A stretch of DNA of 64,000 nt from Octopus sinensis (GCF_006345805.1 NC_042999.1:19096001-19160000); one strand, 5' to 3'. Positions 3,247 through 54,282 are shown, counted from the first letter of the stretch. Numbers and translations: made by a program. Notes: generated by a model not told the origin, from the letters alone.

Positions 3247-3948
3247 TTGAAACCTTTCCTTACCCACATCAAAAGTTTCATTAGGGATGATCTGGACATG
3301 CTCAAACACCTCCCGAAAACAGTTAACGAGGAGGCGCTCCTGGTATCCTTTGATGTCATCAACCTCTACACCAACATCCCACATGAGTATGGTATAGAGG
3401 CAATTGACTTCTGGCTAGAAAAACACCCAGAGACATTCCCTGACCGCATTAACAAGACTTTTATTACAGAATCTCTCAAGTTCATTCTGACCAACAATTT
3501 TTTTCTCTTCGACGACACACACTACCGTCAAAAATGTGGTATTGCGATGGGTACCAAGGCTGCACCAGTCCTTGCGAACCTCATAATGGGTTTCTTCGAA
3601 CTATCACTCTATGAAATATCACGCCAGAAATTTGGACATGTTTTCGACACCTACCTAAAGGAAAACTGGAAAAGGTATTTGGATGATTGTTTCATCATAT
3701 GGAAAGAACCTTATGAAAAACTCCTGGAATTCAAAACCATACTAAACAACATACATCCCAACATCCAATTCACTATGGAATTAAGCAAACATCATCTACC
3801 ATTCCTTGATCTCCTAATTATAAAAACACCTAAGAACCAAATCATAACAGACATCTACCACAAACCCACAGACTCACAACAATACCTCCTCTTTAGTTCA
3901 TGCCAACCCAAAACACACCAAGACAAATATCCCTTTCAATTTGGCTAA
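3247..3948 (+). pseudogene. Penelope reverse transcriptase, C-terminal part (frameshift near 3905)
   Basis: Canonical PLE RT motifs. After a 1-nt shift the frame continues KHTKTNIPFNLAKRVRTIVSD. Confidence 0.92.
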
Positions 3949-4220
3949 AAGGGTACGCACCATTGTCTCGGATCCAAAAACACGAGAAAAACGCCTTCAA
4001 GACCTCAAAAAAAACTATTACAACGCCAATATCCCTCCACCCTTATAGAGTATGGAATAAAACGCGCCAAAGAACTAGATAACATTACACTGAAAACTCC
4101 AACCTAACACCACACACAACCTCAAAAACACTTCCATACATTTCCACCCACAACCCCAAAAATATCGAAGCATACACCACAATCATACAAAACCTCAGTC
4201 TACTGTCAACAGACCCCAAA

Positions 4221-4745
4221 ATGAAAAACATTATAAATACACACAAAATCCTCAAATGTAAAAGGCAACACAAATCTTTAAAAAAACTCTTGACAAATGC
4301 CAAACTTCACACACCACATCCACCCCCAGCAGTAAAAAAATGTGCACGCCCAAACTGTGGGACATGCCCCCTCCTACTTGAAGGTTCTGAATTTACCTTC
4401 AAACAAGGTACGAAGTTTAAAATCAAGACTAACTTCTCCTGTTCCTCCGAGAACCTTATCTACGTTCTCACATGCGCTGGTTGCCAACATAATTATGTTG
4501 GACAAACGAGTCTCCCATTACGTAAACGAGTAGCGGTGCATAAAGAACAAATAAATCTCCCGGAATACCGACAAATTCCACTGAGTGGCCACATAGACTC
4601 ATGCGCTAAAGACTTAAACCCCAAATTCTATATATTCCCCTTCTACCAATGTAAAGACGGCATCACCACACTGGAGATAATTAACAAGGAGAATCTCTTT
4701 ATTGAAAAATTCCAAACACAACTTAACATACAAACTCCTCGTTGA
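4221..4745 (+). pseudogene. Penelope GIY-YIG endonuclease domain
   Basis: CxxxxCxxC linker and the NLIYVLTC-x2-C-x3-YVGQT GIY-YIG motif, followed by the typical His/Glu/Asn C-terminal motifs. Confidence 0.92.
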
Positions 4746-5756
4746 TCAAACTTCCCTTTTCTACCTCATTCTTCATGAAAGGACTCACACAAATATATAA
4801 GGATACCATAGATTCATCACTTCAAGCAAAACCTTATACTCTTTAAATATCATTTTTACTATTGTTGTTATTACCATCATCTTTATTATCTATGATATAA
4901 TAATCTGAAATGCAATTGTCTATGCAAATTTATATAATTAGAAAATAATATAAATAAAGTGTTAAAATCTGAAAGTTAAATTAACAAACAATTATATAAA
5001 AAAGATAATGCAAATGAAGCTAAAATGACAATTTTATAATTTGGGGTTTATCAGCAGCTTTTATTTAAGAACTCAAAAGAGTTGTCTCCCCTTATTCACG
5101 ACACAGGAACTGAAGAACCACAATTACTACTACTTCCTGTTTTGCCAACATCCTAAATTAAACCAATCAACACATGGCCTTAATCCCATTGGATTCTAAT
5201 ACGTCAAGGTAATTTTTTCATGAACAATCATTAAACTCAAGATACACAACGAACTCACAATGTATCGGAGTACTTATTTTTTTATTTTTTATTTTTATAC
5301 ATATTTACTACTATTAATTTTTATACATATTTACTACTATTATTCTTTTGCAAAAAACAATGCAACTTTTTTTCCCCTTCTCATTTTAAAAAAAAAACCT
5401 TTTCATCTAACTATTCTTGATAAGTAAACTATGACGAAAACGGTTTGAATAAATATATTTCTAATTTTTTCATTTTCTCAATTCATTAGAATTTTCTTTC
5501 AATCGAGCATTCTACATTTATACATTTTTCATTGCTTATCATTCTCCACATGCGGTCAACACAACCTCACCATTTATGATCTATATATATATATATATAT
5601 TATATATATATATAATATATAGATATATATTATATATATATATCAGCCGTATGTATGTATATATAGAGAGATAGATAGATATATAGATATATACATAGAT
5701 ACATACATACATACATATATATGTATACATATATATACCCAACTTATTTATGTATC

Positions 5757-12664: not shown

Positions 12665-13035
12665 ATAAAAGTTCTTGCTGGAAGTGGAATGCCTGAAATT
12701 TTGTTGGGGAGACCTATGTGCGCAAGCGGTACTTATATTATTGACCTCGAAAAGATGAAAGGCAATGTCAAACTTGGTGGAATTTGAACTCAAAATATAA
12801 AGACGGATGAAATACCGCTAAATTTATCAGGCGTGCTAAAGATTCTACTTTATTAATGCATTGTATTATAGGAACAATTTTGTTGGAGGAACAAGTGGAT
12901 TACATCAACTCCTGTGCTCATCTTGTACTAATTCTTTCGACACTGAAATGATGAATGGCAAAATCGACGTCAGCGGAATTTGAACTCAGAACGTAAAGTC
13001 AAGCCAAATACCGCTAAAGCCTTATTTCTAACTCG
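12665..13035 (-). mobile_element. Two adjacent diverged SINEs of the ggcggcgagc family
   Basis: The reverse complement carries gagttcaaattcc..gcctttcatc..gtcga, as in the copy at 40028. Confidence 0.75.
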
Positions 13036-13289
13036 TTAACGATCCTCCCAGCTCGATGCCTTGATTTTATGGTATTCATTAGTGTAAAATATATGTGATG
13101 TAGGAAAAGTTTATGTTAGACATTCTTCAAAATTTGAAGTATTCTGCATTCTACGTAATCGATGGTGCTTCACTGTATCTTTCACCAGTAAGCATTTTAC
13201 AGTAACACTTGGATACACCGTGTTCTATTGATCCAACCGTGTTAGTAATAAATGTTACTCAATCGCTACCACTAAATCGTTCGGGAAAT

Positions 13290-39436: not shown

Positions 39437-40027
39437 ATTTGTGAGTGTGTGTGTGTGTGTGTGCTGGTGAACATAGATACATACACACGCACACACAAAT
39501 ATGCCTGAAGAATTTCGTTTGCGTAATGATACTTTGAGTCATGTGCAGTTGGAGCGTAATCCGCTCTGATTTCCATTCCTGATAAGTTCTCCTTATATCG
39601 TTGTTGCCTTCTGGAAAGGCATGAAGTTAACAACTGCCATCAGCCATGCCATCGTCTTATCTAAACACAATTTAGCAACCTATTTATTCAGTAATAAATA
39701 TCGTTACCAAGTAAAGCAAATATTGTGTGAAGAAGGCTTGGTAACATTTCTCATTCACATTTCAAAAGGTCTGTTTTAGACACACTTCACGAGACAGTAC
39801 TCTTTCGTTTATGTATCCATTAATCCTGAATAAATTCGAATAACATTCTAATTGTCTAGAATCAATTTTCTCTTCCAAATGATGCATATTTAAACATTGT
39901 TGATGGCTGTCGTGCTTTGTTGTTATTGCCCTTGCATAGCTTCGCCACTGCGATGAACCTTAGATTTTCAAAAACGATCATTGTGCCAGTTTGGGCGCAT
40001 GTAGGGCGCATTATGTGATGTCTATAA

Positions 40028-40260
40028 GGCGGCGAGCTGGCAGAAACGTTAGCACGCAGGGCGAGGTGCTTAGCGGTATTTCCTCTGCCGTTACGTTCTG
40101 AGTCCAAATTCCGCCGAGGTCAACTTTGCCTTTCATCCTTTCGGGGTCGATAAAATAAGTACCAGTTGCGCACTGGGTTCGATGTAATCGACTCAATTCC
40201 TTTGTGTGTCTTTGTTTGTCTCCTCTATGTATAGCGCCTTGTGGGCAATAAAGAATAAAA
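40028..40260 (+). mobile_element. Full-length SINE (ggcggcgagc family) with a 3' tail homologous to the ORF1-only element
   Basis: tRNA-like head, core gcctttcatcctttcggggtcgataaaataagtaccag, tail tgtctttgtttgtctcctctatgtatagcgccttgtgggcaataaagaat. Confidence 0.9.
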
Positions 40261-45167: not shown

Positions 45168-45515
45168 ACGCAACGGCTAAGTGGTTACGGCAGTGGACAG
45201 GTGGTCGTAGGATCACGGTTTCGATTCCAAGACCGGGCGTTGTGAGTGTTTATTGAGCGAAAACAACTAAAGTAGTAGCGAACTCTGCTGTACTCTTTCA
45301 CCACAACTTTCTCTCACTCTTCTTGTTCTTGTTGTACCTGTATTTCAAAGGGCCAGCCTTGTCACATTCTGTGTCACGCTGAATCTCCCCGAGAACTATG
45401 TAAAGGGCACACGTATGTGAGCAGTGCTCGGCCACTTACACATTAATTTCAGGAGCAGGCTGTTCCGTTAATCGGATCAGCTGGAATCATCGTCGTCATA
45501 ACCGACGGAGTGCCA
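45168..45515 (+). mobile_element. tRNA-derived SINE
   Basis: gcaacggctaagtggttacggcagtgg..gtttcgattcc..; the tail ..accgacggagtgcc resembles that of the copy at 57936. Confidence 0.8.
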
Positions 45516-45780
45516 CGATATTCTGTCGTCTTACATCATCTGGCACAAGGTCACCTCCTCCAATGCCTCATTCCATCTCAAAAGATCTTTGTCTTGCAAG
45601 TTTCTTGGGGATCCTGCTAGTGCTGGTACAGATAAATAACACTCAGTTTGCATTGCGCAGTATTTGATGTCACGAGGGGTGTCCAACCGTACAAATCATG
45701 CCAAAACAGACTGAGAAACATGAGGCAGTCTTCTGCCTAGCCAGTTCCTGTCAAACCGTCCAACCTGTGCCAGCGTGGGT

Positions 45781-45970
45781 TACGAAAGGATGCTGCAAAA
45801 TGTTCCTGGTTTTTGTTAAATGCAAATACAGAAGGATCTGAAAATTATGATTTTATTCAACATATCCTCCGCTCAGATTCACCTAGCTATTGCAGCGTGC
45901 CTTCCGTTTTTATAAGCCCTGTAAAAAGAAAATCCGGGATGAAGCTAGGAAATTTCCAGTATTCCTCGTA
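45781..45970 (-). mobile_element. Old internally deleted mariner derivative
   Basis: Imperfect TIRs tacga..ggatgctg..ttcctggttt / tacgaggaatactg..ttcctagctt. The minus strand retains FFLQGL*..RCNS*VNLSGGYVE*, a mariner C-terminus. Confidence 0.6.
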
Positions 45971-45997
45971 TTATATAATATAAATATATATATAATA

Positions 45998-46037
<40 letters not shown>

Positions 46038-46313
46038 CCCACTCTGTCTTTTTCCTCTGTCTTCCGTTCTCTGGATCTTTCCTTCTTTCCTGAGCGTCCA
46101 ATAATACTATATTTGTTCCACGTCCTCTCATTGTTGTGTTTTTTTAATGCTTTCTTGTTGGTGATTCTTTATTACCCACTAGGGGCGACACAGAGGGGGA
46201 CACCAAAAGACATGGGGACATAGAACATTATAATTAAAATTTATGAAAAATGAATTGTTAAGTGAAAGAAAATGATATTATGAAAGCGATACCAACGGCC
46301 CCATCCGTCAGCA

Positions 46314-47731
46314 TCACTTACCTGTCCTTTGTTTTTCATAGTCACTTGAATGTTCTTTGCCAATACGAATAAATTCCATATCCATTCTTACTCCGAAATA
46401 CTCATCCATATTTTCCACGAATTCATCGCTCATTCTTATATCTTTCACCTCCCAATTCTCCCTTTCACACCTCACCATAAACTCACCTATGTTCTTCTTT
46501 TCAATCACAGCATACCTAGTCTCACCAACATCATACCATTTATACTCTTCCATTAGACTTTTAACTTCTTTCTGTTCAGTCATAGTACAAATGTACGGCC
46601 TGATATCGATTTCAATCTCTTGTGTGTGTATTCTTTTTTTCTTTTGTTTTCTTGTTGGGGGGGAGCGGGTGGGTTCAATGTCTGCATGGATAGGGTGGGA
46701 CTCAGAGGGTTGGGTGGTTTTGGGGTGGATTGGAATTCCATATTATTTTCTTTTCCACGTATTCTTCTCTTCCTCTTATTTCCAGCTACCTTCCATTTCT
46801 GTGTATTCTCTTCCTCTTCTACTGTCTCCTTCTCCTCTGGTTTCTGCTTCTCTCTCTGTGGTTCGAAATCCATTTCTTTCCCTGGGGGAGGGCAGAAGGC
46901 TCTTATGTGACCCCTCAGGCCACACTTGTAACAACGTGGAGCTCTGCCCTCTACCCACACTCTCATGATCACGTCTCCCAATCTGATGCTTTCCGTCAGG
47001 TCCACCAGTACCTCGGTCTCTGCCTGTACGTTCAGCTCCACTGTTACGCCTCTCCAGCCCTCGGACTTAGCCGAGGCATGGAGAATATCTACTTCCTCCT
47101 CGTGGCCGCTGATCACAGCCGCCACAATCCACTCTGCCTCCACGTTTGGTGGCACTCCCTCCACCCTTATTCGTGTAATCCTTCTGTTTAAATACGTAGG
47201 TAACAGTGTTACCTTTTCTGACTTCACCGCCTTCGCCGCCATCTTCCTCGCTGCAGATTCACTTTCAAAATGTACCACTACGGTTCCGTACTTGGATCCT
47301 CGAGTCAGAAAATTAATTTCCTCCTCAGTTCTTCGCAGGGCTTCCTCTATCCACTGCATGGTTACAACTTCTACCCTCTTCCTTTCGTTTGCGAACACCC
47401 TGTAAATAATGGTCCTCCTATCATACCATTCCTTTCTCCTGGGTGTCGGTGCCAGTTCCACCTCACCGCTTTCCATTTTCATGTATTTCTGGTAACTTGG
47501 CAACTTGGCCAAGTCGACCCCTTTCTCTTCCGCCTTCTTGGTTACACCGGCATAGGTATAACTCAGCTTCTCTTCCAATTTCCTTGCTGCCATTTCTAGC
47601 TCCTTCTCAGACGTAGACAAGTCTGATAAAGACTCGAAAACTCCAGGCTTTTCTTCCATCAGCTTCATTGTAATTGCCTGTTCCAGTTCCTCATCTGTCG
47701 TGGACAAGTCTGTTAGAGACTCATAGTCCAT
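46314..47731 (-). CDS. ORF1/gag-like protein, copy 1 (472 aa if the -1 frameshift near 46710 is repaired; 383 aa as given)
   Basis: Acidic N-terminal duplicated motif, RRM-like region (TVVVHFESE..; TRIRVEGVPP..), single CCHC knuckle GRAPRCYKCGLRGHIRAFCP, basic and Pro-rich linker. The architecture matches Tx1/L1-type ORF1. Confidence 0.8.
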
Positions 47732-48066
47732 TTCCTTCTGTCTGACAGACCGAAAACGGCCGCCAAAACAGAAAAAGTGTAACGCGCCGAACCAGCGAAA
47801 CGCGAAACCGCGTCAACGCCGTTCAGAATTTCCACAACAACAACAACGCTTTTTCTTCTTTTTTACCGAATTTTACGAGCGTAAAAAAACACAACCGACC
47901 AAATGGGTAGGATTTGGTGATTCTTTATTACCCACTAGGGGCGACACAGAGGGGGACACCAAGAGACATGGGGACATAGAACATTATAATTAAAATTTAT
48001 GAAAATGAATTGTTAAACGAAAAAATGATAAAATGAAAGCGATACCAACGGCCCCGTCCGTCAGCA

Positions 48067-48598
48067 TCACTTACCTGTCCTTTGTTTTTCATAGTCACTT
48101 GAATGTTCTTTGCCAATACGAATAAATTCCATATCCATTCTTACTCCGAAATACTCATCCATATTTTCCACGAATTCATCGCTCATTCTTATATCTTTCA
48201 CCTGCCAATTCTCCCTTTCACACCTCACCATAAACTCACCTATGTTCTTCTTTTCAATCACAGCATACCTAGTCTCACCAACATCATACCATTTATACTC
48301 TTCCATTAGACTTTTAACTTCTTTCTGTTCAGTCATAGTACAAATGTACGGCCTGATATCGATTTCAATCTCTTGGTGTGTGTATTCTTTTTTTTCTTTT
48401 GTTTTCTTGTTGGGGGGGAGCGGGGGGGTGGGTTCAATGTCTGCATGGATAGGGGGGACTCAGAGGGCGTGGGTGGTTTTGGGGTGGATTGGAGTTCCAT
48501 ATTATTTTCTTTTCCACGTATTCTTCTCTTCCTCTTACTTCCAGCTTCCTTCCATTTCTGTGTATTCTCTTCCTCTGTTTCCTTCTCCTCTGGTTTCT
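48067..48598 (-). pseudogene. ORF1 copy 2, C-terminal part only
   Basis: Homologous to copy 1; truncated just downstream of the knuckle. Confidence 0.85.
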
Positions 48599-48747
48599 TA
48601 TTTCTTTATTACCCACTAGGGGCGACACAGAAAGGGACACTAAGAAACATGGGGACATATAACATTATAATTAAACTTTATGAACATGAATTGTTAAACG
48701 AAAAAATGATTAAATGAAAGCGATACCAACGGCCCCGTCCGTCAGCA

Positions 48748-50159
48748 TCACTTACCTGTCCTTTGTTTTTCATAGTCACTTGAATGTTCCTTGCCAATAC
48801 GAACAAATTCCATATCCATTCTTACTCCGAAATACTCATCCATATTTTCCACGAATTCATCGCTCATTCTTATATCTTTCACCTCCCAATTCTCGCATTC
48901 ACACATCACCATAAAGTCACCTATGTTCTTCTTTTCAATCACAGCATACCTAGTCTCACCAACATCATACCATTTATACTCTTCCATTAGACTTTTAACT
49001 TCTTTCTGTTCAGTCATAGTACAAATGTACGGCCTGATATCGATTTCAATCTCTTGTGTGTGTGTATTCTTTTTTTTCTTTTGTTTTCTTGTTGGGGGGG
49101 AGCGGGTGGGTTCAATGTCTGCATGGATAGGGTGGGACTCAGAGGGCGTGGGTGGTTTTGGGGTGGATTGCAGTTCCATATTATTTTCTTTTCCACGTAT
49201 TCTTCTCTTCCTCTTACTTCCAGCTTCCTTCCATTTCTGTGTATTCTCTTCCTCTGTTTCTTCTCCTCTGGTTTGCTTCTCTCTCTCTGGTTCGGAATCC
49301 ATTTCTTTCCCTGGGGGAGGGCAGAAGGCTCTTATGTGACCCCTCAGGCCACACTTGTAACAACGTGGAGCACTGCCCTCCACCCACACTCTCATGATCA
49401 CGTCTCCCAGTCTGATGCTTTCCGTCAGGTCCACCAGTACCTCGGTCTCTGCCTGTACGTTCAGCTCCACTGTTACGCCTCTCCAGCCTCGGACTTAACC
49501 GAGGCATGGAGAATATCCACTTCGTCCTCGTGGCCGCTGATCACAGCCGCCACAATCCATTCTGCCTCCACGTTTGGTGGCACTCCCTCCACCCTTATTC
49601 GTGTAATCCTCCTGTTTAAATACGTAGGTAACAGTGTTAACTTTTCCGACTTCACCGCCTTTGCCGCCATCTTCCTCGCTGCAGATTCACTTTTAAAGTG
49701 CACAACTACGGTCCCATACTTGGATCCTCGAGTCAGAAAATTTATTTCCTCCTCAGTTCGTCGCAGGGCTTCCTCTATCCACTGCATGGTTACAACTTCT
49801 ACCCTCTTCCTTTCGTTTGCGAACACCCTGTAAATAATGGTCCTCCTATCATACCATTCCTTTCTCCTGGGTGTCGGTGATAGTTCCACCTCACCGCTTT
49901 CCTTTTTCATGTATTTCTGGTAACTTGGCAACTTGGCCATGTCGACCCCTTTCTCTTCCGCCTTCTTGGTTACACCGGCATAGGTATAACTCAGCTTCTC
50001 TTCCAAATTCCTCGCTGCCATTTCTAGCTCCTTCTCAGACGTAGGCAAGTCTGATAAAGACTCGAAAACTCCAGCCTTTTCTTCCATCAGCTTCATTGCA
50101 ATTGCCTGTTCCAGTTCCTCATCTGTCGTGGACAAGTCTGTTAAAGACTCATAGTCCAT
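48748..50159 (-). pseudogene. ORF1 copy 3 (1-nt deletion near 49487)
   Basis: ORFs 49473..50159 and 48748..49470 together give the whole protein, with the C-terminus in frame. Confidence 0.85.
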
Positions 50160-50503
50160 TTCCTTCTGTCTGACAGACCGAAAACGGCCGCCAAAACAGA
50201 AAAAAGTTTAACGCGCCGAACGAGCGAAACGCGAAACCGCGTCAACGCCGTTCAGAATTTCCACAACAACAACAACGCTTTTTGTTCTTTTTTACCGAAT
50301 TTTCAGGAGCCGAAAAAAAACACCGACCAAATGGTTCAGATTTGGTGATTCATTCTACCATAGGGGACGACCCATAGGGGGACAGAGGGGGACCCAAAGA
50401 CATGGGGACATAGAACATTATAATTAAAATTTATGAAAAATGAATTGTTAAGTGAAAGAAAATGATATTATGAAAGCGATACTAACGGCCCCGTCCGTTA
50501 GCA

Positions 50504-51925
50504 TCACTTACCTGTCCTTTGTTTTTCATCGTCACTTGAATGTTCTTGCCAATACGAATAAATTCCATATCCATTCTTACTCCGAAATACTCATCCATAT
50601 TTTCAACGATTCATCGCTCATTCTTATATCTTTCACCTCCCAATTCTCCCTTTCACACCTCACCATAAACTCATCTATGTTCTTCTTTTCAATCACAGCA
50701 TACCTAGTCTCACCAACTTCATACCATTTATACTCTTCCATTAGACTTTTAACTTCTTTCTGTTCAGTCATAGTACAAATGTACGGCCTGATATCGAATT
50801 CAATCTCTTGTGTGTGTGTGTATTATTTTTTTTCTTTTGTTTTCTTGTTGGGGGGGAGCGGGTGGGTTCACTGTCTGCAGGAATAGGGTGGGACTCAGAG
50901 GGTGTGGGTGGTTTTGGGGTAGATTGGTGTTCCATGTTATTTCCTTTTCCTCGTATTCTTCTCTTCCTCTTATTTCCAACTTCCTTCCATTTCTGTGTAT
51001 TCTCTTCCTCTTCTACTGTCTCCTTCTCCTCTGGTTTCTGCTTCTCTCTGTGTGGTTCGGAATCCATTTCTTTCCCTGGGGGAGGGCAGAAGGCTCTTAT
51101 GTGACCCCTCAGGCCACACTTGTAACAACGTGGAGCTCTGCCCTCCACCCACACTCTCATGATCACGTCTCCCAATCTGATGCTTTCCGCCAGGTCCACC
51201 AGTACCTCGTTCTCCGCCTGCACGTTCAGCTCCACTGTTACGCCTCTCCAGCCCTCGGACTTAACCGAGGCATGGAGAATATCCACTTCCTCCTCGTGGC
51301 CGCTGATCACAGCCGCCACAATCCACTCTGCCTCTACGTTTGGTGGCACTCCCTCCACCCTTATTCGTGTAATCCTTCTGTTTAAGTACGTAGGTAAAAG
51401 TGTTACCTTTTCTGACTTCACCGCCTTCGCCGCCATCTTCCTCGCTGCAGACTCACTTTTAAAATGCACAACTACGGTACCGTACTTGGATCCTCGAGTC
51501 AGAAAATTAATTTCCTCCTCAGTTCTTCGCAGGGCCTCCTCTATCCACTCCATGTTTACAACTTCTACCCTCTTCCTTTCGTTTGCGAACACCCTGTAAA
51601 TAATGGTCCTCTTATCATACCATTCTTTTCTCCTGGGTGTCGGTGATAGTTCCACCTCACCGCTTTCCTTTTTCATGTATTTCTGGTAACTTGGTAGCTT
51701 GGCCAAGTCGACCCCTTTCTCTTCCGCCTTCTTGGTTACACCGGCATAGGTATATCCCAGCTTCTCGTCCAATTTCCTCGCTGCCATTTCTAGCTCCTTC
51801 TCAGACGTAGACAAGTCTGATAAAGACTCGAAAACTCCAGGCTTTTCTTCCATCAGCTTCATTGTAATTGCCTATTCCAGTTCCTCATCTGTCGTGGACA
51901 AGTCTGTTAGAGACTCATAGTCCAT
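50504..51925 (-). pseudogene. ORF1 copy 4 (nonsense TAG at codon 18; C-terminal indels)
   Basis: ATG at 51925 reads MDYESLTDLSTTDEELE*. ORF 50768..51862 carries the knuckle. Confidence 0.85.
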
Positions 51926-53134
51926 TTCCTTCTGTCTGACAGACCGAAAACGGCCGCCAAAACAGAAAAAAGTTTAACGCGCCGAACCAGCGAAACGCGA
52001 AACCGCATCAACGCCGTATTTATTGACCCTTTTCTTTCCTTTGAAAATCGACACGAACTTTCCGGACAACCCAATATAAAATGGCTGAGAACTACTGGTA
52101 TAGATACTTGCTATTTCGGCTGCTGCTGCTAACATAACTACTGTTCGTAAGGACGTTGCCACTACTGCTTGCCAATGTTGCTCTTCTGGCGTTTCTACAC
52201 CTTCCGAGATTTGTATCTGAATATTGTAAGACTTTAGTCTTGCTTTCATGGGAGTGAATGTCGCTCCTGTATCGGATGCTTTTTAAAATACTGTCTGTAA
52301 TCGTTATGTCGATGCTGATAGATTAGGTAGAGCCGTTTAGACATAGGGCTTGTAATAATCTAGGCGTGGTCTTTCCGATCACTTATAAAACTCTTTATCG
52401 GTTTGCTTCACTCTTCCTCCCTGTGGGTTTCATATATCAGAGAGAAGCAGACAGGCACCGGGAACGATTTAGCATTACTATAAAATACTATAGACGTGAA
52501 TTTAAATAGAATACGAATAGAATTCGAGAGTAAGACAGACGTAGATTAGACACAAACATCCGCAAAAATGCTCTTTGCAGAGAGCATATCTCTTCGTGAG
52601 ATATGAATGCAGCAGACCACTAGGGCATTATACACGCGCGCGGTAACACACACACACACACACACGTACACACATGTATATATGATTATATATAACCATG
52701 CATATGAATATTGATATGAACATTTTAAATATGCATGTATGTGTATGTGTGTGTTTATATATGAATATATAGTTATATAGATTTAAATATACACGCGTTG
52801 GTTTGCTACGTGGAAATAGTTTTTAGTTCCATTTATTATATTTCTCCATTCATACTATGAATGACGTTTACTTTCTATGGCGCGTATTCTTTTTACATTA
52901 GTTATTTCCATGGTAACGTAATTTTGTTTGGTTTTTAACGGCTAATAATCTAATTTCACTTCATAATTTGTAACTGAATTGTAAGTATGTATTTGATTTA
53001 TCCTTATGTCATAATGTTATTTTTGATATTCTGGTTAATTACGATGTATTTATTGTGTTTTCATAAGAGTGTTTATGTATATGAGATTGGTTGTGAGTTT
53101 TTATTGTATAATTAATTTATTTATCTGTATGAGT

Positions 53135-54172
53135 GTGGGTGTAAATATTGTTGTATATATCGAGTTTTAGTGAGTATGTATATGCGTATATGTGAGGGAG
53201 CATATGTATCTGTTGTGTGTGTGTTTTGAGTGTGTGTGTGTTTGTGTGTGAATGTGTATTTGGGTTTGTTATTTAGGATTTGGGATGTATGTGTTATTTT
53301 GTCTGTCTGGGGAGGGAGTGGTTTTTGGTGTATATTGAGGTTTATAAGTTAGTATAGGTTTGTGTATAAGTCTTGGGTCTGTGGTTTACGTGTGGGTTTT
53401 TTGTGTGTGAATGTTTAGGTTAGGGGGATTGCTATATAAGTTTGTTATAGGTTTTTAAAGGGAGATTTTATCGTTATATACTTTTATGAGTTTTGGTTTA
53501 TCATGGTTTTCTTAGGTAATTCGTGGTATTTTGTCTATTTTAGGTGTTGGTTATTTTTTTACATTGTTTCATTCATAATTTTTGAGTGGTGTTCGTTTTG
53601 CCACGTGAATAACCGGGTGGTGGGGACTAGCGTTACTTGGAATGTGAATGGAATAGTGTAGTAGTGAGGTAGGCATAGAGAATGGGATTGGTTACTGCAA
53701 GTTGTTTGTTAGAGATGCTAAGGTGAGTTAAAGCTCATAAATGTATAAAATGTATATAATGTTTTGTGGGTGTGTAAGTATTGTTGTATATGTCGAATTT
53801 AGTGAGTATGTATAGGTGTATATGTGAGGGAGTATAGTATCTTTTGTGTGTGAGTGTTTTGCGTGTGAGTGTGTGTTTTGTGTGTGAATGTGTATATGGG
53901 TTGTATTTAGGTTTGGGATGTATGTGTTAATTTGTCTGTGTGGGGAGGGAGTGGGTTTGGTGTATATTGAGGTTTATAAGTTAGTATAGGTATGTGTATA
54001 AGTCGTGAGTCTGTGGTTTACGTGTGTGTATTGTGTGTGAATGTTTAGGTTAGGGGGTTTACTTTATAGGTTTGATAGAGTTTAGCAAAGGGAGATTTTA
54101 TCGTTATATGTTTTAAGAGTTTTGTTTTATCATGGTTTTTTTTAGGGAATTCGTGGTAATTAGTCTATTTTC
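53135..54172. repeat. Two diverged ~405-bp direct repeats (53135-53540, 53765-54172) in an extremely G/T-skewed tract
   Basis: Shared blocks agtgagtatgtata..gagggag..gggagattttatcgttatat..aattcgtggta; C is almost absent from the + strand. Confidence 0.85.
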
Positions 54173-54282
54173 GATATGGATTATATATAGGTTATATATG
54201 GATTATATACTTATATTTTTTTCATTTATACTTTAATTATTTAAAAGTATTATTTTTATATTTTAAAATTTTGATTTTTTAG

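What the first reader, a model, noticed from the sequence alone, without database searches (positions are those of the whole stretch)
46158..52017. Head-to-tail array of a gag/ORF1-only retroelement with no reverse transcriptase
Seen: four same-orientation units, each 5' UTR, ~470-aa ORF1 (RRM-like region plus one CCHC knuckle), short 3' UTR and AATAAA. Only ~155 bp lies between the stop codon and the unit end, so ORF2 is absent. There are no poly(A) tracts and no TSD, and two units are 5'-truncated. Known: ORF1-only HAL1 elements exist in vertebrates, and gag-only HeT-A forms head-to-tail arrays at Drosophila telomeres. Inference: an invertebrate Tx1/L1-derived half-LINE that is mobilised in trans and lands as multimers at an interstitial site. 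I know of no description of this in cephalopods.
Basis: partly seen in the sequence, partly recalled or inferred. Interest (0 to 1): 0.9.

Follow-up and report, generated by a model that had tools for sequence, protein, structure and literature searches.

The report
Octopus ORF1-only LINE derivative in arrays
This is a real head-to-tail cluster of four decayed copies of a 1.75-kb octopus retroelement that keeps only the RNA-binding ORF1 of a LINE and borrows the 3' tail of an L1-like LINE and an abundant SINE; it is an invertebrate counterpart of mammalian HAL1, and it shows that this LINE/SINE system habitually stacks its copies tail-to-head inside chromosomes.

Summary
Window 46158-52017 (minus strand) carries four same-orientation units about 95% alike. 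Two are full length (~1.75 kb) and two are 5'-truncated, all with the same 3' end. There is no ORF2, no poly(A) and no visible TSD. None of the four has an intact ORF.

The ORF encodes two RRM-like domains plus one CCHC knuckle. Its homologues elsewhere sit directly upstream of APE and RT genes, so it is a LINE ORF1. The ORF1-only build is family-wide: 29 copies at five octopus loci, plus two older ORF1-only lineages. One of those is a solitary copy with a 19-bp TSD. ORF1 evolved under purifying selection (pN/pS 0.44).

The last ~45 nt match the tail of an autonomous octopus LINE whose ORF2 resembles L1 ORF2p, and the tail of a common SINE. That LINE, its deletion derivatives and the SINEs also lie head-to-tail, sometimes in mixed arrays.

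The window's units are not each other's closest relatives, so recent local duplication is unlikely. Other arrays did expand that way.

Verdict: a HAL1-like, trans-mobilised half-LINE. How the array was built is unresolved. No description was found in the literature searched. Moderate interest.

The parts
50342..52017 (-). Unit D. First unit in the reading direction. 5'-truncated at unit position ~104. ORF1 is interrupted by TAG at 51872-51874 and by later frameshifts. The poly(A) signal is mutated.
48602..50351 (-). Unit C. Full length. ORF1 is broken by frameshifts, the first a 1-nt deletion near 49485. Its tail variant ends ...AATAAAGAAATA.
47914..48598 (-). Unit B. 5'-truncated at unit position ~1081. 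It keeps only the ORF1 C-terminal part and the 3' UTR, and abuts the tail of C directly.
46158..47925 (-). Unit A. Full length, the last unit of the array. Made of 5' UTR, ORF1 and 3' UTR.
47732..47925 (-). 5' UTR of unit A. CpG-rich, with a T-run plus CGGCTCC/ACGCTCG motif near the 5' end.
46580..47731 (-). ORF1 of unit A as it now reads (383 aa). It leaves the ancestral frame after about codon 340.
46946..47419 (-). Two RRM-like domains, about residues 105-262 of ORF1.
   Evidence: AlphaFold2 model with pLDDT 80-93 over this stretch. The Foldseek top hits are tandem-RRM proteins such as IMP3 RRM12, Sxl, hnRNP A1 and HuR.
46892..46933 (-). Single CCHC zinc knuckle, CYKCGLRGHIRAFC (residues 267-280).
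   Evidence: Weak Pfam zf-CCHC hit. C267, C270, H275 and C280 are invariant in the homologue alignment.
46314..46583 (-). 89-aa segment (MTEQKEV...RTGK). It is the C-terminal part of the ancestral 468-472-aa ORF1. In A it is a separate frame overlapping the ORF1 stop (ATGA). It ends at CAG|GTAAGT, which gene predictors use as a splice donor.
46158..46313 (-). 3' UTR of unit A (156 nt).
46158..46225 (-). 3' tail box, ...TGTCCCC..TCTGTGT.GCCCCTAGTGGGTAATAAAGAA(TCACCAA), with AATAAA at 46168-46173. It is shared with the autonomous LINE and the SINE.
40026..40257 (+). Solitary SINE copy with the same 3' tail box. It is flanked by a ~16-bp TSD (ATTAYGTGATGTCTAT). This shows the same tail being used by a conventional insertion in this window.

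Best explanation
The array consists of four dead copies of a non-autonomous, ORF1-only derivative of an L1/Tx1-type LINE of Octopus.

Shown: each unit is 5' UTR + ORF1 (two RRM-like domains, one CCHC knuckle and a C-terminal extension; ancestrally 468-472 aa) + a 156-nt 3' UTR. The 3' UTR ends in a ~45-nt tail box that an autonomous octopus LINE and an abundant SINE also carry. The element has no endonuclease or reverse transcriptase of its own.

Inferred: its RNA is coated by its own ORF1 protein. It is reverse-transcribed into nicked chromosomal DNA by the ORF2 protein of a tail-sharing LINE, which recognises the tail box. This would explain the constant 3' ends, variable 5' truncations, absence of poly(A) and TSDs of 14-19 bp around solitary copies.

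The head-to-tail array in the window was most probably built during retrotransposition from several different source RNAs. Two modes are possible and cannot be told apart here. In one, the reverse transcriptase jumps from one template to the 3' tail of the next within a single event. In the other, repeated insertions land next to an existing tail. Recent local DNA duplication is not the likely origin here, although other arrays of the family clearly grew afterwards by unequal exchange.
For: ORF1 identity:
- 342 remote homologues.
- In L003 and L004 the homologue is followed within about 6-650 nt by Exo_endo_phos and RVT_1 genes.
- In O. vulgaris L005 and O. sinensis L006 a 476-aa homologue (33% identity, E 4e-39) precedes a 1132-aa APE+RT+zf-RVT ORF2. 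That ORF2 aligns to human L1 ORF2p over residues 3-868 (E 2e-71).
- Fold: tandem RRM plus CCHC.

ORF2-less state is family-wide:
- 29 copies at the window, L001, L002, L007 and L008 all have the same ORF1-to-3'UTR structure.
- A 75%-identical second lineage (L002 20839-22506) and a third lineage (L009; 52% aa identity to P0006) have the same build. Their ORF-end/3'UTR junction is homologous to the window unit's.

Retrotransposition hallmarks:
- Common 3' ends with 5' truncations at unit positions 104, 383, 968, 1081, 1252, 1437 and 1480.
- A 19-bp TSD around the solitary L009 copy inside a SINE.

Selection: pN/pS 0.44 between the intact L008 and L002 ORFs, Fisher p 1e-6.

Shared tail.

Array origin:
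- Window units differ by 4.2-5.8%. A and B are closer to L001 units (3.1% and 1.6%), and C is closer to L002/L007 units (3.0%), than to their window neighbours.
- Tail variants differ between neighbours.
- Mixed arrays occur: unit / 5'-truncated LINE / LINE / unit in L001, and three ORF1 families in a row in L002.
- SINE-SINE tail-to-internal dimers occur.
Against: - No autonomous LINE with a near-identical ORF1 or 5' UTR (the direct parent or driver) was found. The tail-sharing LINE sampled has only 33-35% ORF1 identity.
- Trans-mobilisation by that LINE is inference from the tail alone. No RNA structure or covariation supports the tail as a recognition element.
- No TSD flanks the window array, and no empty site was available.
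- Loci other than the window were reached through gene models that favour arrays, so the frequency of arrays is not measured.
- L002 (3-unit higher-order repeat, 0-0.1% divergence) and L006 (99.3-99.5%) show that DNA-level duplication does make such arrays. An old duplication followed by gene conversion from elsewhere cannot be fully excluded for the window.
- Clade assignment rests on PDB and Pfam matches, not on a phylogeny.
Confidence: 0.72

Rival explanations
1. Dead-DNA duplication. A single ORF1-only copy inserted once. The four units then arose by tandem duplication and unequal crossing-over, and internal deletions produced the two 'truncated' units.
For: There is no TSD and no filler at the junctions of the window array. 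L002 contains a 3-unit higher-order repeat with 0-0.1% divergence, and L006 has 99.3-99.5% identical deleted-LINE units. So the process operates in this family.
Against: - The window units are not monophyletic. A, B and C each have closer relatives at other loci than inside the array.
- Both short units keep a complete 3' end and lose only 5' sequence, the signature of incomplete reverse transcription.
- Neighbours carry different tail variants.
- Arrays elsewhere mix unrelated families.
Confidence: 0.12
2. Multimer landing. Read-through transcription of an existing array gives a multi-unit RNA, which is reverse-transcribed in one piece at a new site.
For: The two full-length junctions in the window (D to C and B to A) carry similar sequence between AATAAAGAA and the 5' UTR: TCACCAAATCTGAACCATTTGG versus TCACCAAATCCTACCCATTTGG. 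L001 has a related stretch. This is as expected if junctions are inherited. The internal junctions have longer post-AATAAA extensions than the terminal unit.
Against: - It does not explain the C to B junction, where a tail is fused to ORF position 1081.
- It does not explain the different phylogenetic affinities of A, B, C and D.
- The shared stretch can equally be the true 5' end or a long 3' extension of the element.
Confidence: 0.1
3. Host gene family. The units are tandemly duplicated copies of a domesticated gag-like gene rather than a mobile element.
For: ORF1 is under purifying selection. The O. vulgaris annotation contains gene models that use the 89-aa segment as an exon.
Against: - All four window copies are disrupted.
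- Copies are dispersed on at least five chromosomes with 5' truncations.
- A relative has a TSD inside a SINE.
- The 3' tail is shared with a LINE and a SINE.
- The gene models are chimeras with unrelated genes such as HAUS1 and a HYDIN/CFAP65-like protein.
Confidence: 0.03

Closest known systems
HAL1 (half-L1) of mammals
   Same: A non-autonomous LINE derivative that keeps 5' UTR, ORF1 and 3' end but lacks ORF2. It is presumed to be mobilised in trans by the ORF2p of an autonomous relative while its own ORF1 is kept under selection. HAL1 is from my own knowledge; it is mentioned in papers listed, e.g. PMC5753468.
   Different: - Different host phylum and LINE lineage.
- No poly(A) tail; a specific ~45-nt tail box is shared with a SINE instead.
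- ORF1 is of the RRM+RRM+CCHC type, not the coiled-coil/RRM/CTD type.
- At least three deeply diverged ORF1-only lineages exist.
- Copies are habitually head-to-tail.
- No near-identical autonomous parent has been found yet.
HeT-A (with TART/TAHRE) of Drosophila telomeres
   Same: A gag-only non-LTR element that depends on RT supplied in trans. It occurs in head-to-tail arrays with variably 5'-truncated members, mixed with its autonomous relatives.
   Different: - HeT-A arrays are at chromosome ends, built by addition to the terminus, and have oligo(A) junctions.
- Here all sampled loci lie tens of Mb inside chromosomes.
- The window has no telomeric repeats and normal sequence on both sides.
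- Junctions lack A-runs.
- HeT-A belongs to the Jockey clade.
Tandem and tail-to-internal dimers of non-LTR elements formed by double insertion and later expanded by unequal exchange (R1 array; McGurk and Barbash 2018, PMC5932611)
   Same: [quoted passage not shown] Distinct truncation points serve as evidence of independent events. Later expansion into higher-order arrays matches L002 and L006 here.
   Different: In that model a copy of the target-site duplication sits in each junction. Most junctions here have the tail running straight into the next 5' end with no room for a 14-19-bp TSD. A possible exception is the 16-20-nt ATAGAAATCTACCCAC(GTGT) repeated after three L001 tails.
LINE/SINE pairs with a shared specific 3' tail (stringent-type recognition, e.g. 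eel UnaL2/UnaSINE1; own knowledge)
   Same: A LINE, a SINE and here an ORF1-only element end in the same conserved tail without poly(A).
   Different: The third, protein-coding partner is unusual. No conserved stem-loop could be demonstrated: only a 3-bp hairpin with no covariation.
L1-Tx1 LINEs annotated in Octopus vulgaris (PMC13282606)
   Same: That annotation lists 13 recently active L1-Tx1 families. The autonomous tail-sharing LINE found here (APE+RT+zf-RVT, L1 ORF2p-like) fits that class.
   Different: The paper has no occurrence of 'ORF1' or 'non-autonomous', and its only uses of 'tandem' refer to Tandem Repeats Finder. Unlike classical Tx1-clade members, insertion is not strictly site-specific: the SINE and L009 insertions lie in unrelated sequences.

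Membership tests
LINE (non-LTR) ORF1, RRM + CCHC type | Sequence homology to ORF1 proteins encoded directly upstream of APE-RT ORF2 | tested here: met
   BLASTP to the L006 ORF1 gives E 4e-39.
LINE (non-LTR) ORF1, RRM + CCHC type | RRM fold(s) followed by a CCHC zinc knuckle | tested here: met
   The AF2 model shows two beta-alpha-beta-beta-alpha-beta domains, pLDDT 80-93. Foldseek hits tandem-RRM proteins with probability 1.00. The CCHC residues are invariant. Pfam zf-CCHC is only sub-threshold.
ORF1-only non-autonomous LINE derivative (HAL1-like) | ORF2 (APE/RT) absent in the family as a whole, not only at one locus | tested here: met
   29 copies at five loci plus two older lineages all go from the ORF1 stop to the tail in ~155 nt. 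There is no ORF2 by tblastn in the window. A whole-genome census was not possible.
ORF1-only non-autonomous LINE derivative (HAL1-like) | 3' end shared with an autonomous LINE that can supply ORF2p | tested here: met
   The ~45-nt tail box is conserved between the unit, L005/L006/L001 LINE copies and SINEs.
ORF1-only non-autonomous LINE derivative (HAL1-like) | Insertion hallmarks of target-primed reverse transcription (5' truncation, TSD) | tested here: met
   5' truncations with constant 3' ends. A 19-bp TSD flanks the solitary L009 relative. There is no TSD around the window array itself.
ORF1-only non-autonomous LINE derivative (HAL1-like) | Identifiable autonomous parent with near-identical 5' UTR and ORF1 | tested here: not met
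   No DNA similarity was found between the unit and the L005-type LINE outside the tail. ORF1 identity is only 33-35%. Only ~200 kb of octopus DNA could be sampled, so the parent may exist unsampled or be extinct.
ORF1-only non-autonomous LINE derivative (HAL1-like) | Actual mobilisation in trans by a LINE ORF2p | not testable with these tools
   Needs a retrotransposition assay or polymorphic insertions.
L1/Tx1 group of LINEs (for the tail-sharing autonomous partner) | APE + RT ORF2 that groups with L1/Tx1 in an RT phylogeny | tested here: inconclusive
   There is a contiguous match to human L1 ORF2p over residues 3-868 (E 2e-71), against E 1e-24 for R2. Pfam gives Exo_endo_phos + RVT_1 + zf-RVT. 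No reference set of other APE clades (CR1, Jockey, RTE, I) was available, so no tree was made.
Tx1 clade sensu stricto | Sequence-specific insertion into one repeated target | tested here: not met
   SINE copies and the L009 element sit in unrelated target sequences with different TSDs.
HeT-A-type telomeric retrotransposon array | Location at chromosome ends; arrays extend the terminus; oligo(A) junctions | tested here: not met
   Loci lie at 9.5-135 Mb inside chromosomes of 30-182 Mb. The window has 46 kb and 12 kb of ordinary flanks and no TTAGGG repeats. There are no A-runs at the junctions.
Penelope-like elements / retrozymes (tandem units with hammerhead ribozymes) | Hammerhead or other self-cleaving ribozyme in each unit | tested here: not met
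   Rfam at E <= 1 over 45500-52600 gave only one chance lncRNA hit.
Satellite / tandem segmental duplication | Units of one array are each other's closest relatives and share one period | tested here: not met
   Not met for the window: unit lengths are 1676, 1750, 685 and 1768 nt, and the nearest relatives are at other loci. Met for parts of L002 and L006.

The most novel reading that the evidence does not exclude
Octopus harbours an old, diversified gag-only LINE lineage, with at least three sublineages down to 52% ORF1 identity. It has persisted without its own RT. Together with its L1/Tx1-like driver and the partner SINE, it uses a tail-directed joining step that systematically builds mixed head-to-tail arrays at interstitial sites. 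That step would be either serial template jumping onto any RNA bearing the tail box, or preferential nicking next to an existing tail. In effect this is HeT-A/TART-style array building away from telomeres, and a source of new satellites.
Probability: 0.25. Interest if true: 0.7.

Novelty: new variant of a known kind. Interest (0 to 1): 0.5.

Why it matters
ORF1-only LINE derivatives are well known only from mammals (HAL1) and, in a special telomeric form, from Drosophila (HeT-A).

An independent invertebrate case has three useful properties. It uses a sequence-specific tail instead of poly(A). It has a selected ORF1. It has several old sublineages. Together these give a natural test of what ORF1 protein contributes in cis when ORF2 protein comes in trans.

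The regular tail-to-head stacking of LINE, half-LINE and SINE copies offers a tractable system for two questions: how reverse transcriptases join templates in vivo, and how transposon dimers seed satellite arrays.

Practically, these arrays and the strong splice-donor-like site at the ORF end generate chimeric gene models in current octopus annotations. They should be masked.

Tried and rejected
- Pfam on the window ORFs gave only sub-threshold zf-CCHC and spurious DUF4833/Ephrin hits.
- The first word-indexed protein search found only O. vulgaris gene models built on the 89-aa segment and nothing for the 383-aa part. The exhaustive HMMER search was needed.
- Hammerhead ribozymes, Penelope-like elements and retrozymes: no Rfam hit.
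- tRNA-like head in the SINE: ARAGORN found none, so the head origin is left open.
- Homology of the 89-aa C-terminal segment to the C-termini of related ORF1s (P0012, P0015) looked plausible by eye but is not significant by BLASTP (E > 3). It is not claimed. Selection on this segment alone is also not significant (p 0.32).
- RNA structure in the shared tail: only a 3-bp hairpin with no covariation.
- TSD for the window array and for the solitary L008 copy: none convincing.
- Identifying the window's own record through exact look-up of two of its 89-aa ORFs: not on record. The species is therefore inferred only as Octopus of the vulgaris/sinensis group, from 97-99% protein identity.
- Programmed frameshift or reinitiation at the ATGA overlap was considered. 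The frameshifts sit at different positions, mostly in C- and A-homopolymer runs at codons ~356 and ~364. They are therefore independent slips or assembly errors, and the single long ORF is ancestral.
- The upstream flank (52018-52300), which ends in GGGTCAATAAATAC, was examined as a possible older tail. There is no similarity to any element sampled.

Full report
**1. Observation.**
BLASTN of the first unit against the whole window returns exactly four same-strand matches and nothing else. All are on the minus strand.
- A: 46158-47925, full length, 1768 nt.
- B: 47914-48598, starts at unit position 1081.
- C: 48602-50351, full length.
- D: 50342-52017, starts at unit position 104.

The region stands out in composition, at 44-45% G+C against about 35% around it. 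Reading the minus strand, each full unit has three parts: a ~190-nt CpG-rich leader, a long ORF, and 156 nt of 3' UTR that ends ...GCCCCTAGTGGGTAATAAAGAA(TCACCAA). There is no poly(A) and no telomeric repeat. A tblastn search with a related LINE ORF2 finds nothing in the 64 kb.

Two corrections apply. First, the units are on the minus strand. Second, none of the four has an intact ~470-aa ORF.
- A is split 383 + 89 aa by a 1-nt deletion near codon 340.
- C has three frameshifts.
- D has an in-frame TAG (51872-51874) and later frameshifts, and has lost its AATAAA.
- B lacks most of the ORF.

**2. What the ORF is.**
Pfam gives only a sub-threshold zinc knuckle. An exhaustive HMMER search finds 342 relatives, many from Octopus sinensis, O. 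vulgaris and O. bimaculoides. In two contigs of an ENA assembly the homologue is followed by Exo_endo_phos and RVT_1 genes.

In O. vulgaris (L005) and O. sinensis (L006), a 476-aa homologue lies just upstream of a 1132-aa ORF2 with Exo_endo_phos, RVT_1 and zf-RVT domains. That homologue is 33% identical to an intact ORF1 of the unit family (E 4e-39). The ORF2 aligns to human L1 ORF2p continuously over residues 3-868 (E 2e-71, against 1e-24 for R2).

An AlphaFold2 model of the window ORF is confident (pLDDT 80-93) over residues ~100-270. It shows two beta-alpha-beta-beta-alpha-beta domains followed by the CCHC knuckle. Foldseek's best PDB matches are tandem-RRM proteins.

So the ORF is a LINE ORF1 of the RRM/CCHC type. 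The clade of its relatives is most probably L1/Tx1. That assignment rests on the domain set and the PDB match, not on a phylogeny.

**3. The ORF1-only state belongs to the family.**
Gene models of the O. vulgaris assembly that use the 89-aa segment as an exon led to four further loci on four chromosomes. Together with the window they hold 29 copies. All run from the ORF1 stop to the same tail in ~155 nt.
- An uninterrupted 472-aa ORF survives in L002 17345-19073 and L007 1400-3132.
- A 468-aa ORF survives in the solitary, 10%-diverged copy in L008.
- Frameshifts in the other copies fall at different places, mostly in C- and A-runs at codons ~356 and ~364. The single long ORF is therefore ancestral.
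- Between the L008 and L002 ORFs, pS is 0.185 and pN is 0.081. The ratio is 0.44 (Fisher p 1e-6). ORF1 was therefore under purifying selection while the family diversified.

Two older lineages have the same build. One is a 75%-identical copy at L002 20839-22506. The other is a 1.6-kb element in O. sinensis (L009). Its ORF1 contains P0006, which is 52% identical to the window's. Its ORF-end/3'UTR junction (GGACAGGTAAGCGATG...) is homologous to the window's.

The L009 copy is solitary. It sits inside a SINE and is flanked by a 19-bp duplication of SINE positions 16-34, CAGAAAYGTTAGCACGCCG. This is direct evidence that ORF1-only elements of this group insert by a TSD-generating, LINE-type mechanism.

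**4. Who moves it (inference).**
The last ~45 nt of the unit align with two other element types. One is the 3' end of the autonomous L005/L006/L001 LINE copies. The other is the 3' end of an abundant ~230-nt SINE. The shared consensus is TTGT.TTGTCCCC.TCT.TGT..GCCCCTTGTGGGTAATAA.

Solitary SINEs have 14- and ~16-bp TSDs. One of them lies in this window at 40026-40257.

A LINE, a SINE and a half-LINE sharing one specific, non-poly(A) tail is the pattern known for LINE/SINE pairs in which the RT recognises the 3' tail. I infer that a tail-sharing LINE supplies ORF2p. This is not shown:
- No covariation supports a tail structure.
- The sampled LINE is not the direct parent. It has no DNA similarity to the unit outside the tail.

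**5. The arrays.**
Head-to-tail arrangement is general in this system.
- L002 has nine units and L007 at least ten.
- The autonomous LINE itself is arrayed in L005, with a 5.28-kb period and units 99-100% identical to the reference unit.
- An internally deleted LINE is arrayed in L006. Its units are 99.3-99.5% identical to one another.
- L001 carries a mixed run on one strand: unit, then 5'-truncated LINE, then LINE, then unit. Three differently truncated units lie on the other strand.
- The L002 array continues into a second and then a third ORF1 family.
- SINE-SINE tail-to-internal dimers occur in the window (12718-13062), in L007 and in L009.

Two processes are visible. DNA-level duplication is certain for L002, which has a three-unit higher-order repeat with 0-0.1% divergence, and for L006.

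For the window array, the data point elsewhere.
- The units differ by 4.2-5.8%.
- A and B are closer to L001 units (3.1% and 1.6%) than to their neighbours, and C is closer to L002/L007 units (3.0%).
- Neighbouring units carry different tail variants...AAGAAATA versus ...AAGAATCACCAA.
- Both short units lack only 5' sequence.

This fits several independent source RNAs joined tail-to-head. It does not fit recent local duplication or an assembly artefact.

**6. How the joining happens is unresolved.**
In most junctions the tail, with 6-20 nt following AATAAA, runs directly into the next 5' end or truncation point. There is no room for a 14-19-bp TSD. This favours template jumping by the RT from one RNA onto the 3' end of another within one insertion event. 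Jumping of this kind is known in vitro for non-LTR RTs (papers listed).

In L001, however, the 16-20-nt stretch ATAGAAATCTACCCAC(GTGT) follows three successive tails, and the last occurrence precedes unrelated flank. That looks like a TSD regenerated by serial insertion beside an existing tail. This is the double-insertion route described for Drosophila non-LTR elements (PMC5932611). It could also be a long 3' extension of that subfamily, because a related stretch occurs at the window's full-length junctions.

It would not explain the C-B junction or the scattered affinities of the units.

**7. Comparison with known systems.**
Functionally the element is the counterpart of mammalian HAL1: ORF1-only and trans-mobilised. 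In array form it recalls HeT-A/TART. It fails the defining HeT-A features of terminal location and oligo(A) junctions. It is not Tx1-like in the strict, site-specific sense either.

Penelope-like elements and retrozymes are excluded by the absence of ribozymes. A domesticated gene family is unlikely given dispersed, truncated and disrupted copies and the shared transposon tail.

**8. Novelty.**
A 2026 repeat annotation of O. vulgaris lists 13 recently active L1-Tx1 families (PMC13282606). It has no occurrence of 'ORF1' or 'non-autonomous', and its only uses of 'tandem' refer to Tandem Repeats Finder. The 2022 octopus LINE paper (PMC9115989) describes only RTE and Dong elements and never mentions Tx1 or tandem copies. 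Within the literature I could search, the element and the stacking behaviour are undescribed.

Each ingredient has precedents: half-LINEs, shared LINE/SINE tails, and tail-to-internal tandems that seed arrays. I therefore rate this a new variant of a known kind, of moderate interest. It would rise if a dedicated tail-directed joining mechanism were demonstrated.

Noticed in passing
window 12718-13062 (-); L007 22400-22640 (-); L009 18014-18414 (+): SINE copies lie directly behind the tail of another SINE, and the second copy is often 5'-truncated (starting near SINE position 17-55). The tail-to-head stacking is therefore not peculiar to the ORF1-only element.
   Followed up: partly
window 46314-46316 region and equivalents; proteins P0001-P0005: The ORF ends ...ACAGGTAAGTGA, a perfect CAG|GTAAGT donor. 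O. vulgaris gene models splice the 89-aa segment to the next unit (P0001 and P0002, three repeats). They also splice it to unrelated genes: HAUS1 in P0005 (L008), a HYDIN/CFAP65-like protein in P0003, and an APE fragment in P0004. These are probably annotation chimeras, or possibly real exonisation.
   Followed up: partly
L006 9770-20482: An internally deleted derivative of the autonomous LINE (ORF1 plus the 3' half of ORF2, LINE positions 70-1696 joined to 3366-5279). It is repeated at least three times with a 3.57-kb period at 99.3-99.5% identity.
   Followed up: partly
L002 22507-23008 and L007 15655-16128: Two arrays on different O. vulgaris chromosomes end against the same ~500-bp fragment of a third ORF1 family, starting at the same base (ATGGAGGAAAGCACC...). 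The arrays may be paralogous (segmental duplication), or this may be a composite element.
   Followed up: no
window 3247-3948 (+): A 233-aa ORF with an RVT_1 match (E 6.5e-8). It is a remnant of another retroelement 42 kb from the array and is not detectably related to the L005-type ORF2 by tblastn.
   Followed up: partly
window 53133-53554 and 53766-54184: Two ~420-bp direct copies, 86% identical and about 630 bp apart, lie just upstream of the array. Their nature is unknown.
   Followed up: no
L002 17345-19073: One of the two 'intact' 472-aa copies has the last Cys of the CCHC knuckle replaced by Phe (HIRAFFPPP). An open frame alone does not mean a functional master copy.
   Followed up: no
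L003, L004 (ENA ERZ21867824 contigs): A large family of full-length LINEs (ORF1 homologue + APE + RT) sits in long contigs of an ENA assembly of unknown host. There were 44 ORF1 relatives from that source in one search.
   Followed up: no
L002/L007 units, codons ~356 and ~364 of ORF1: Most frame-breaking indels in the young copies are +/-1 changes in a C-run and an A-run. They could be real slippage or homopolymer errors of the long-read assembly.
   Followed up: partly
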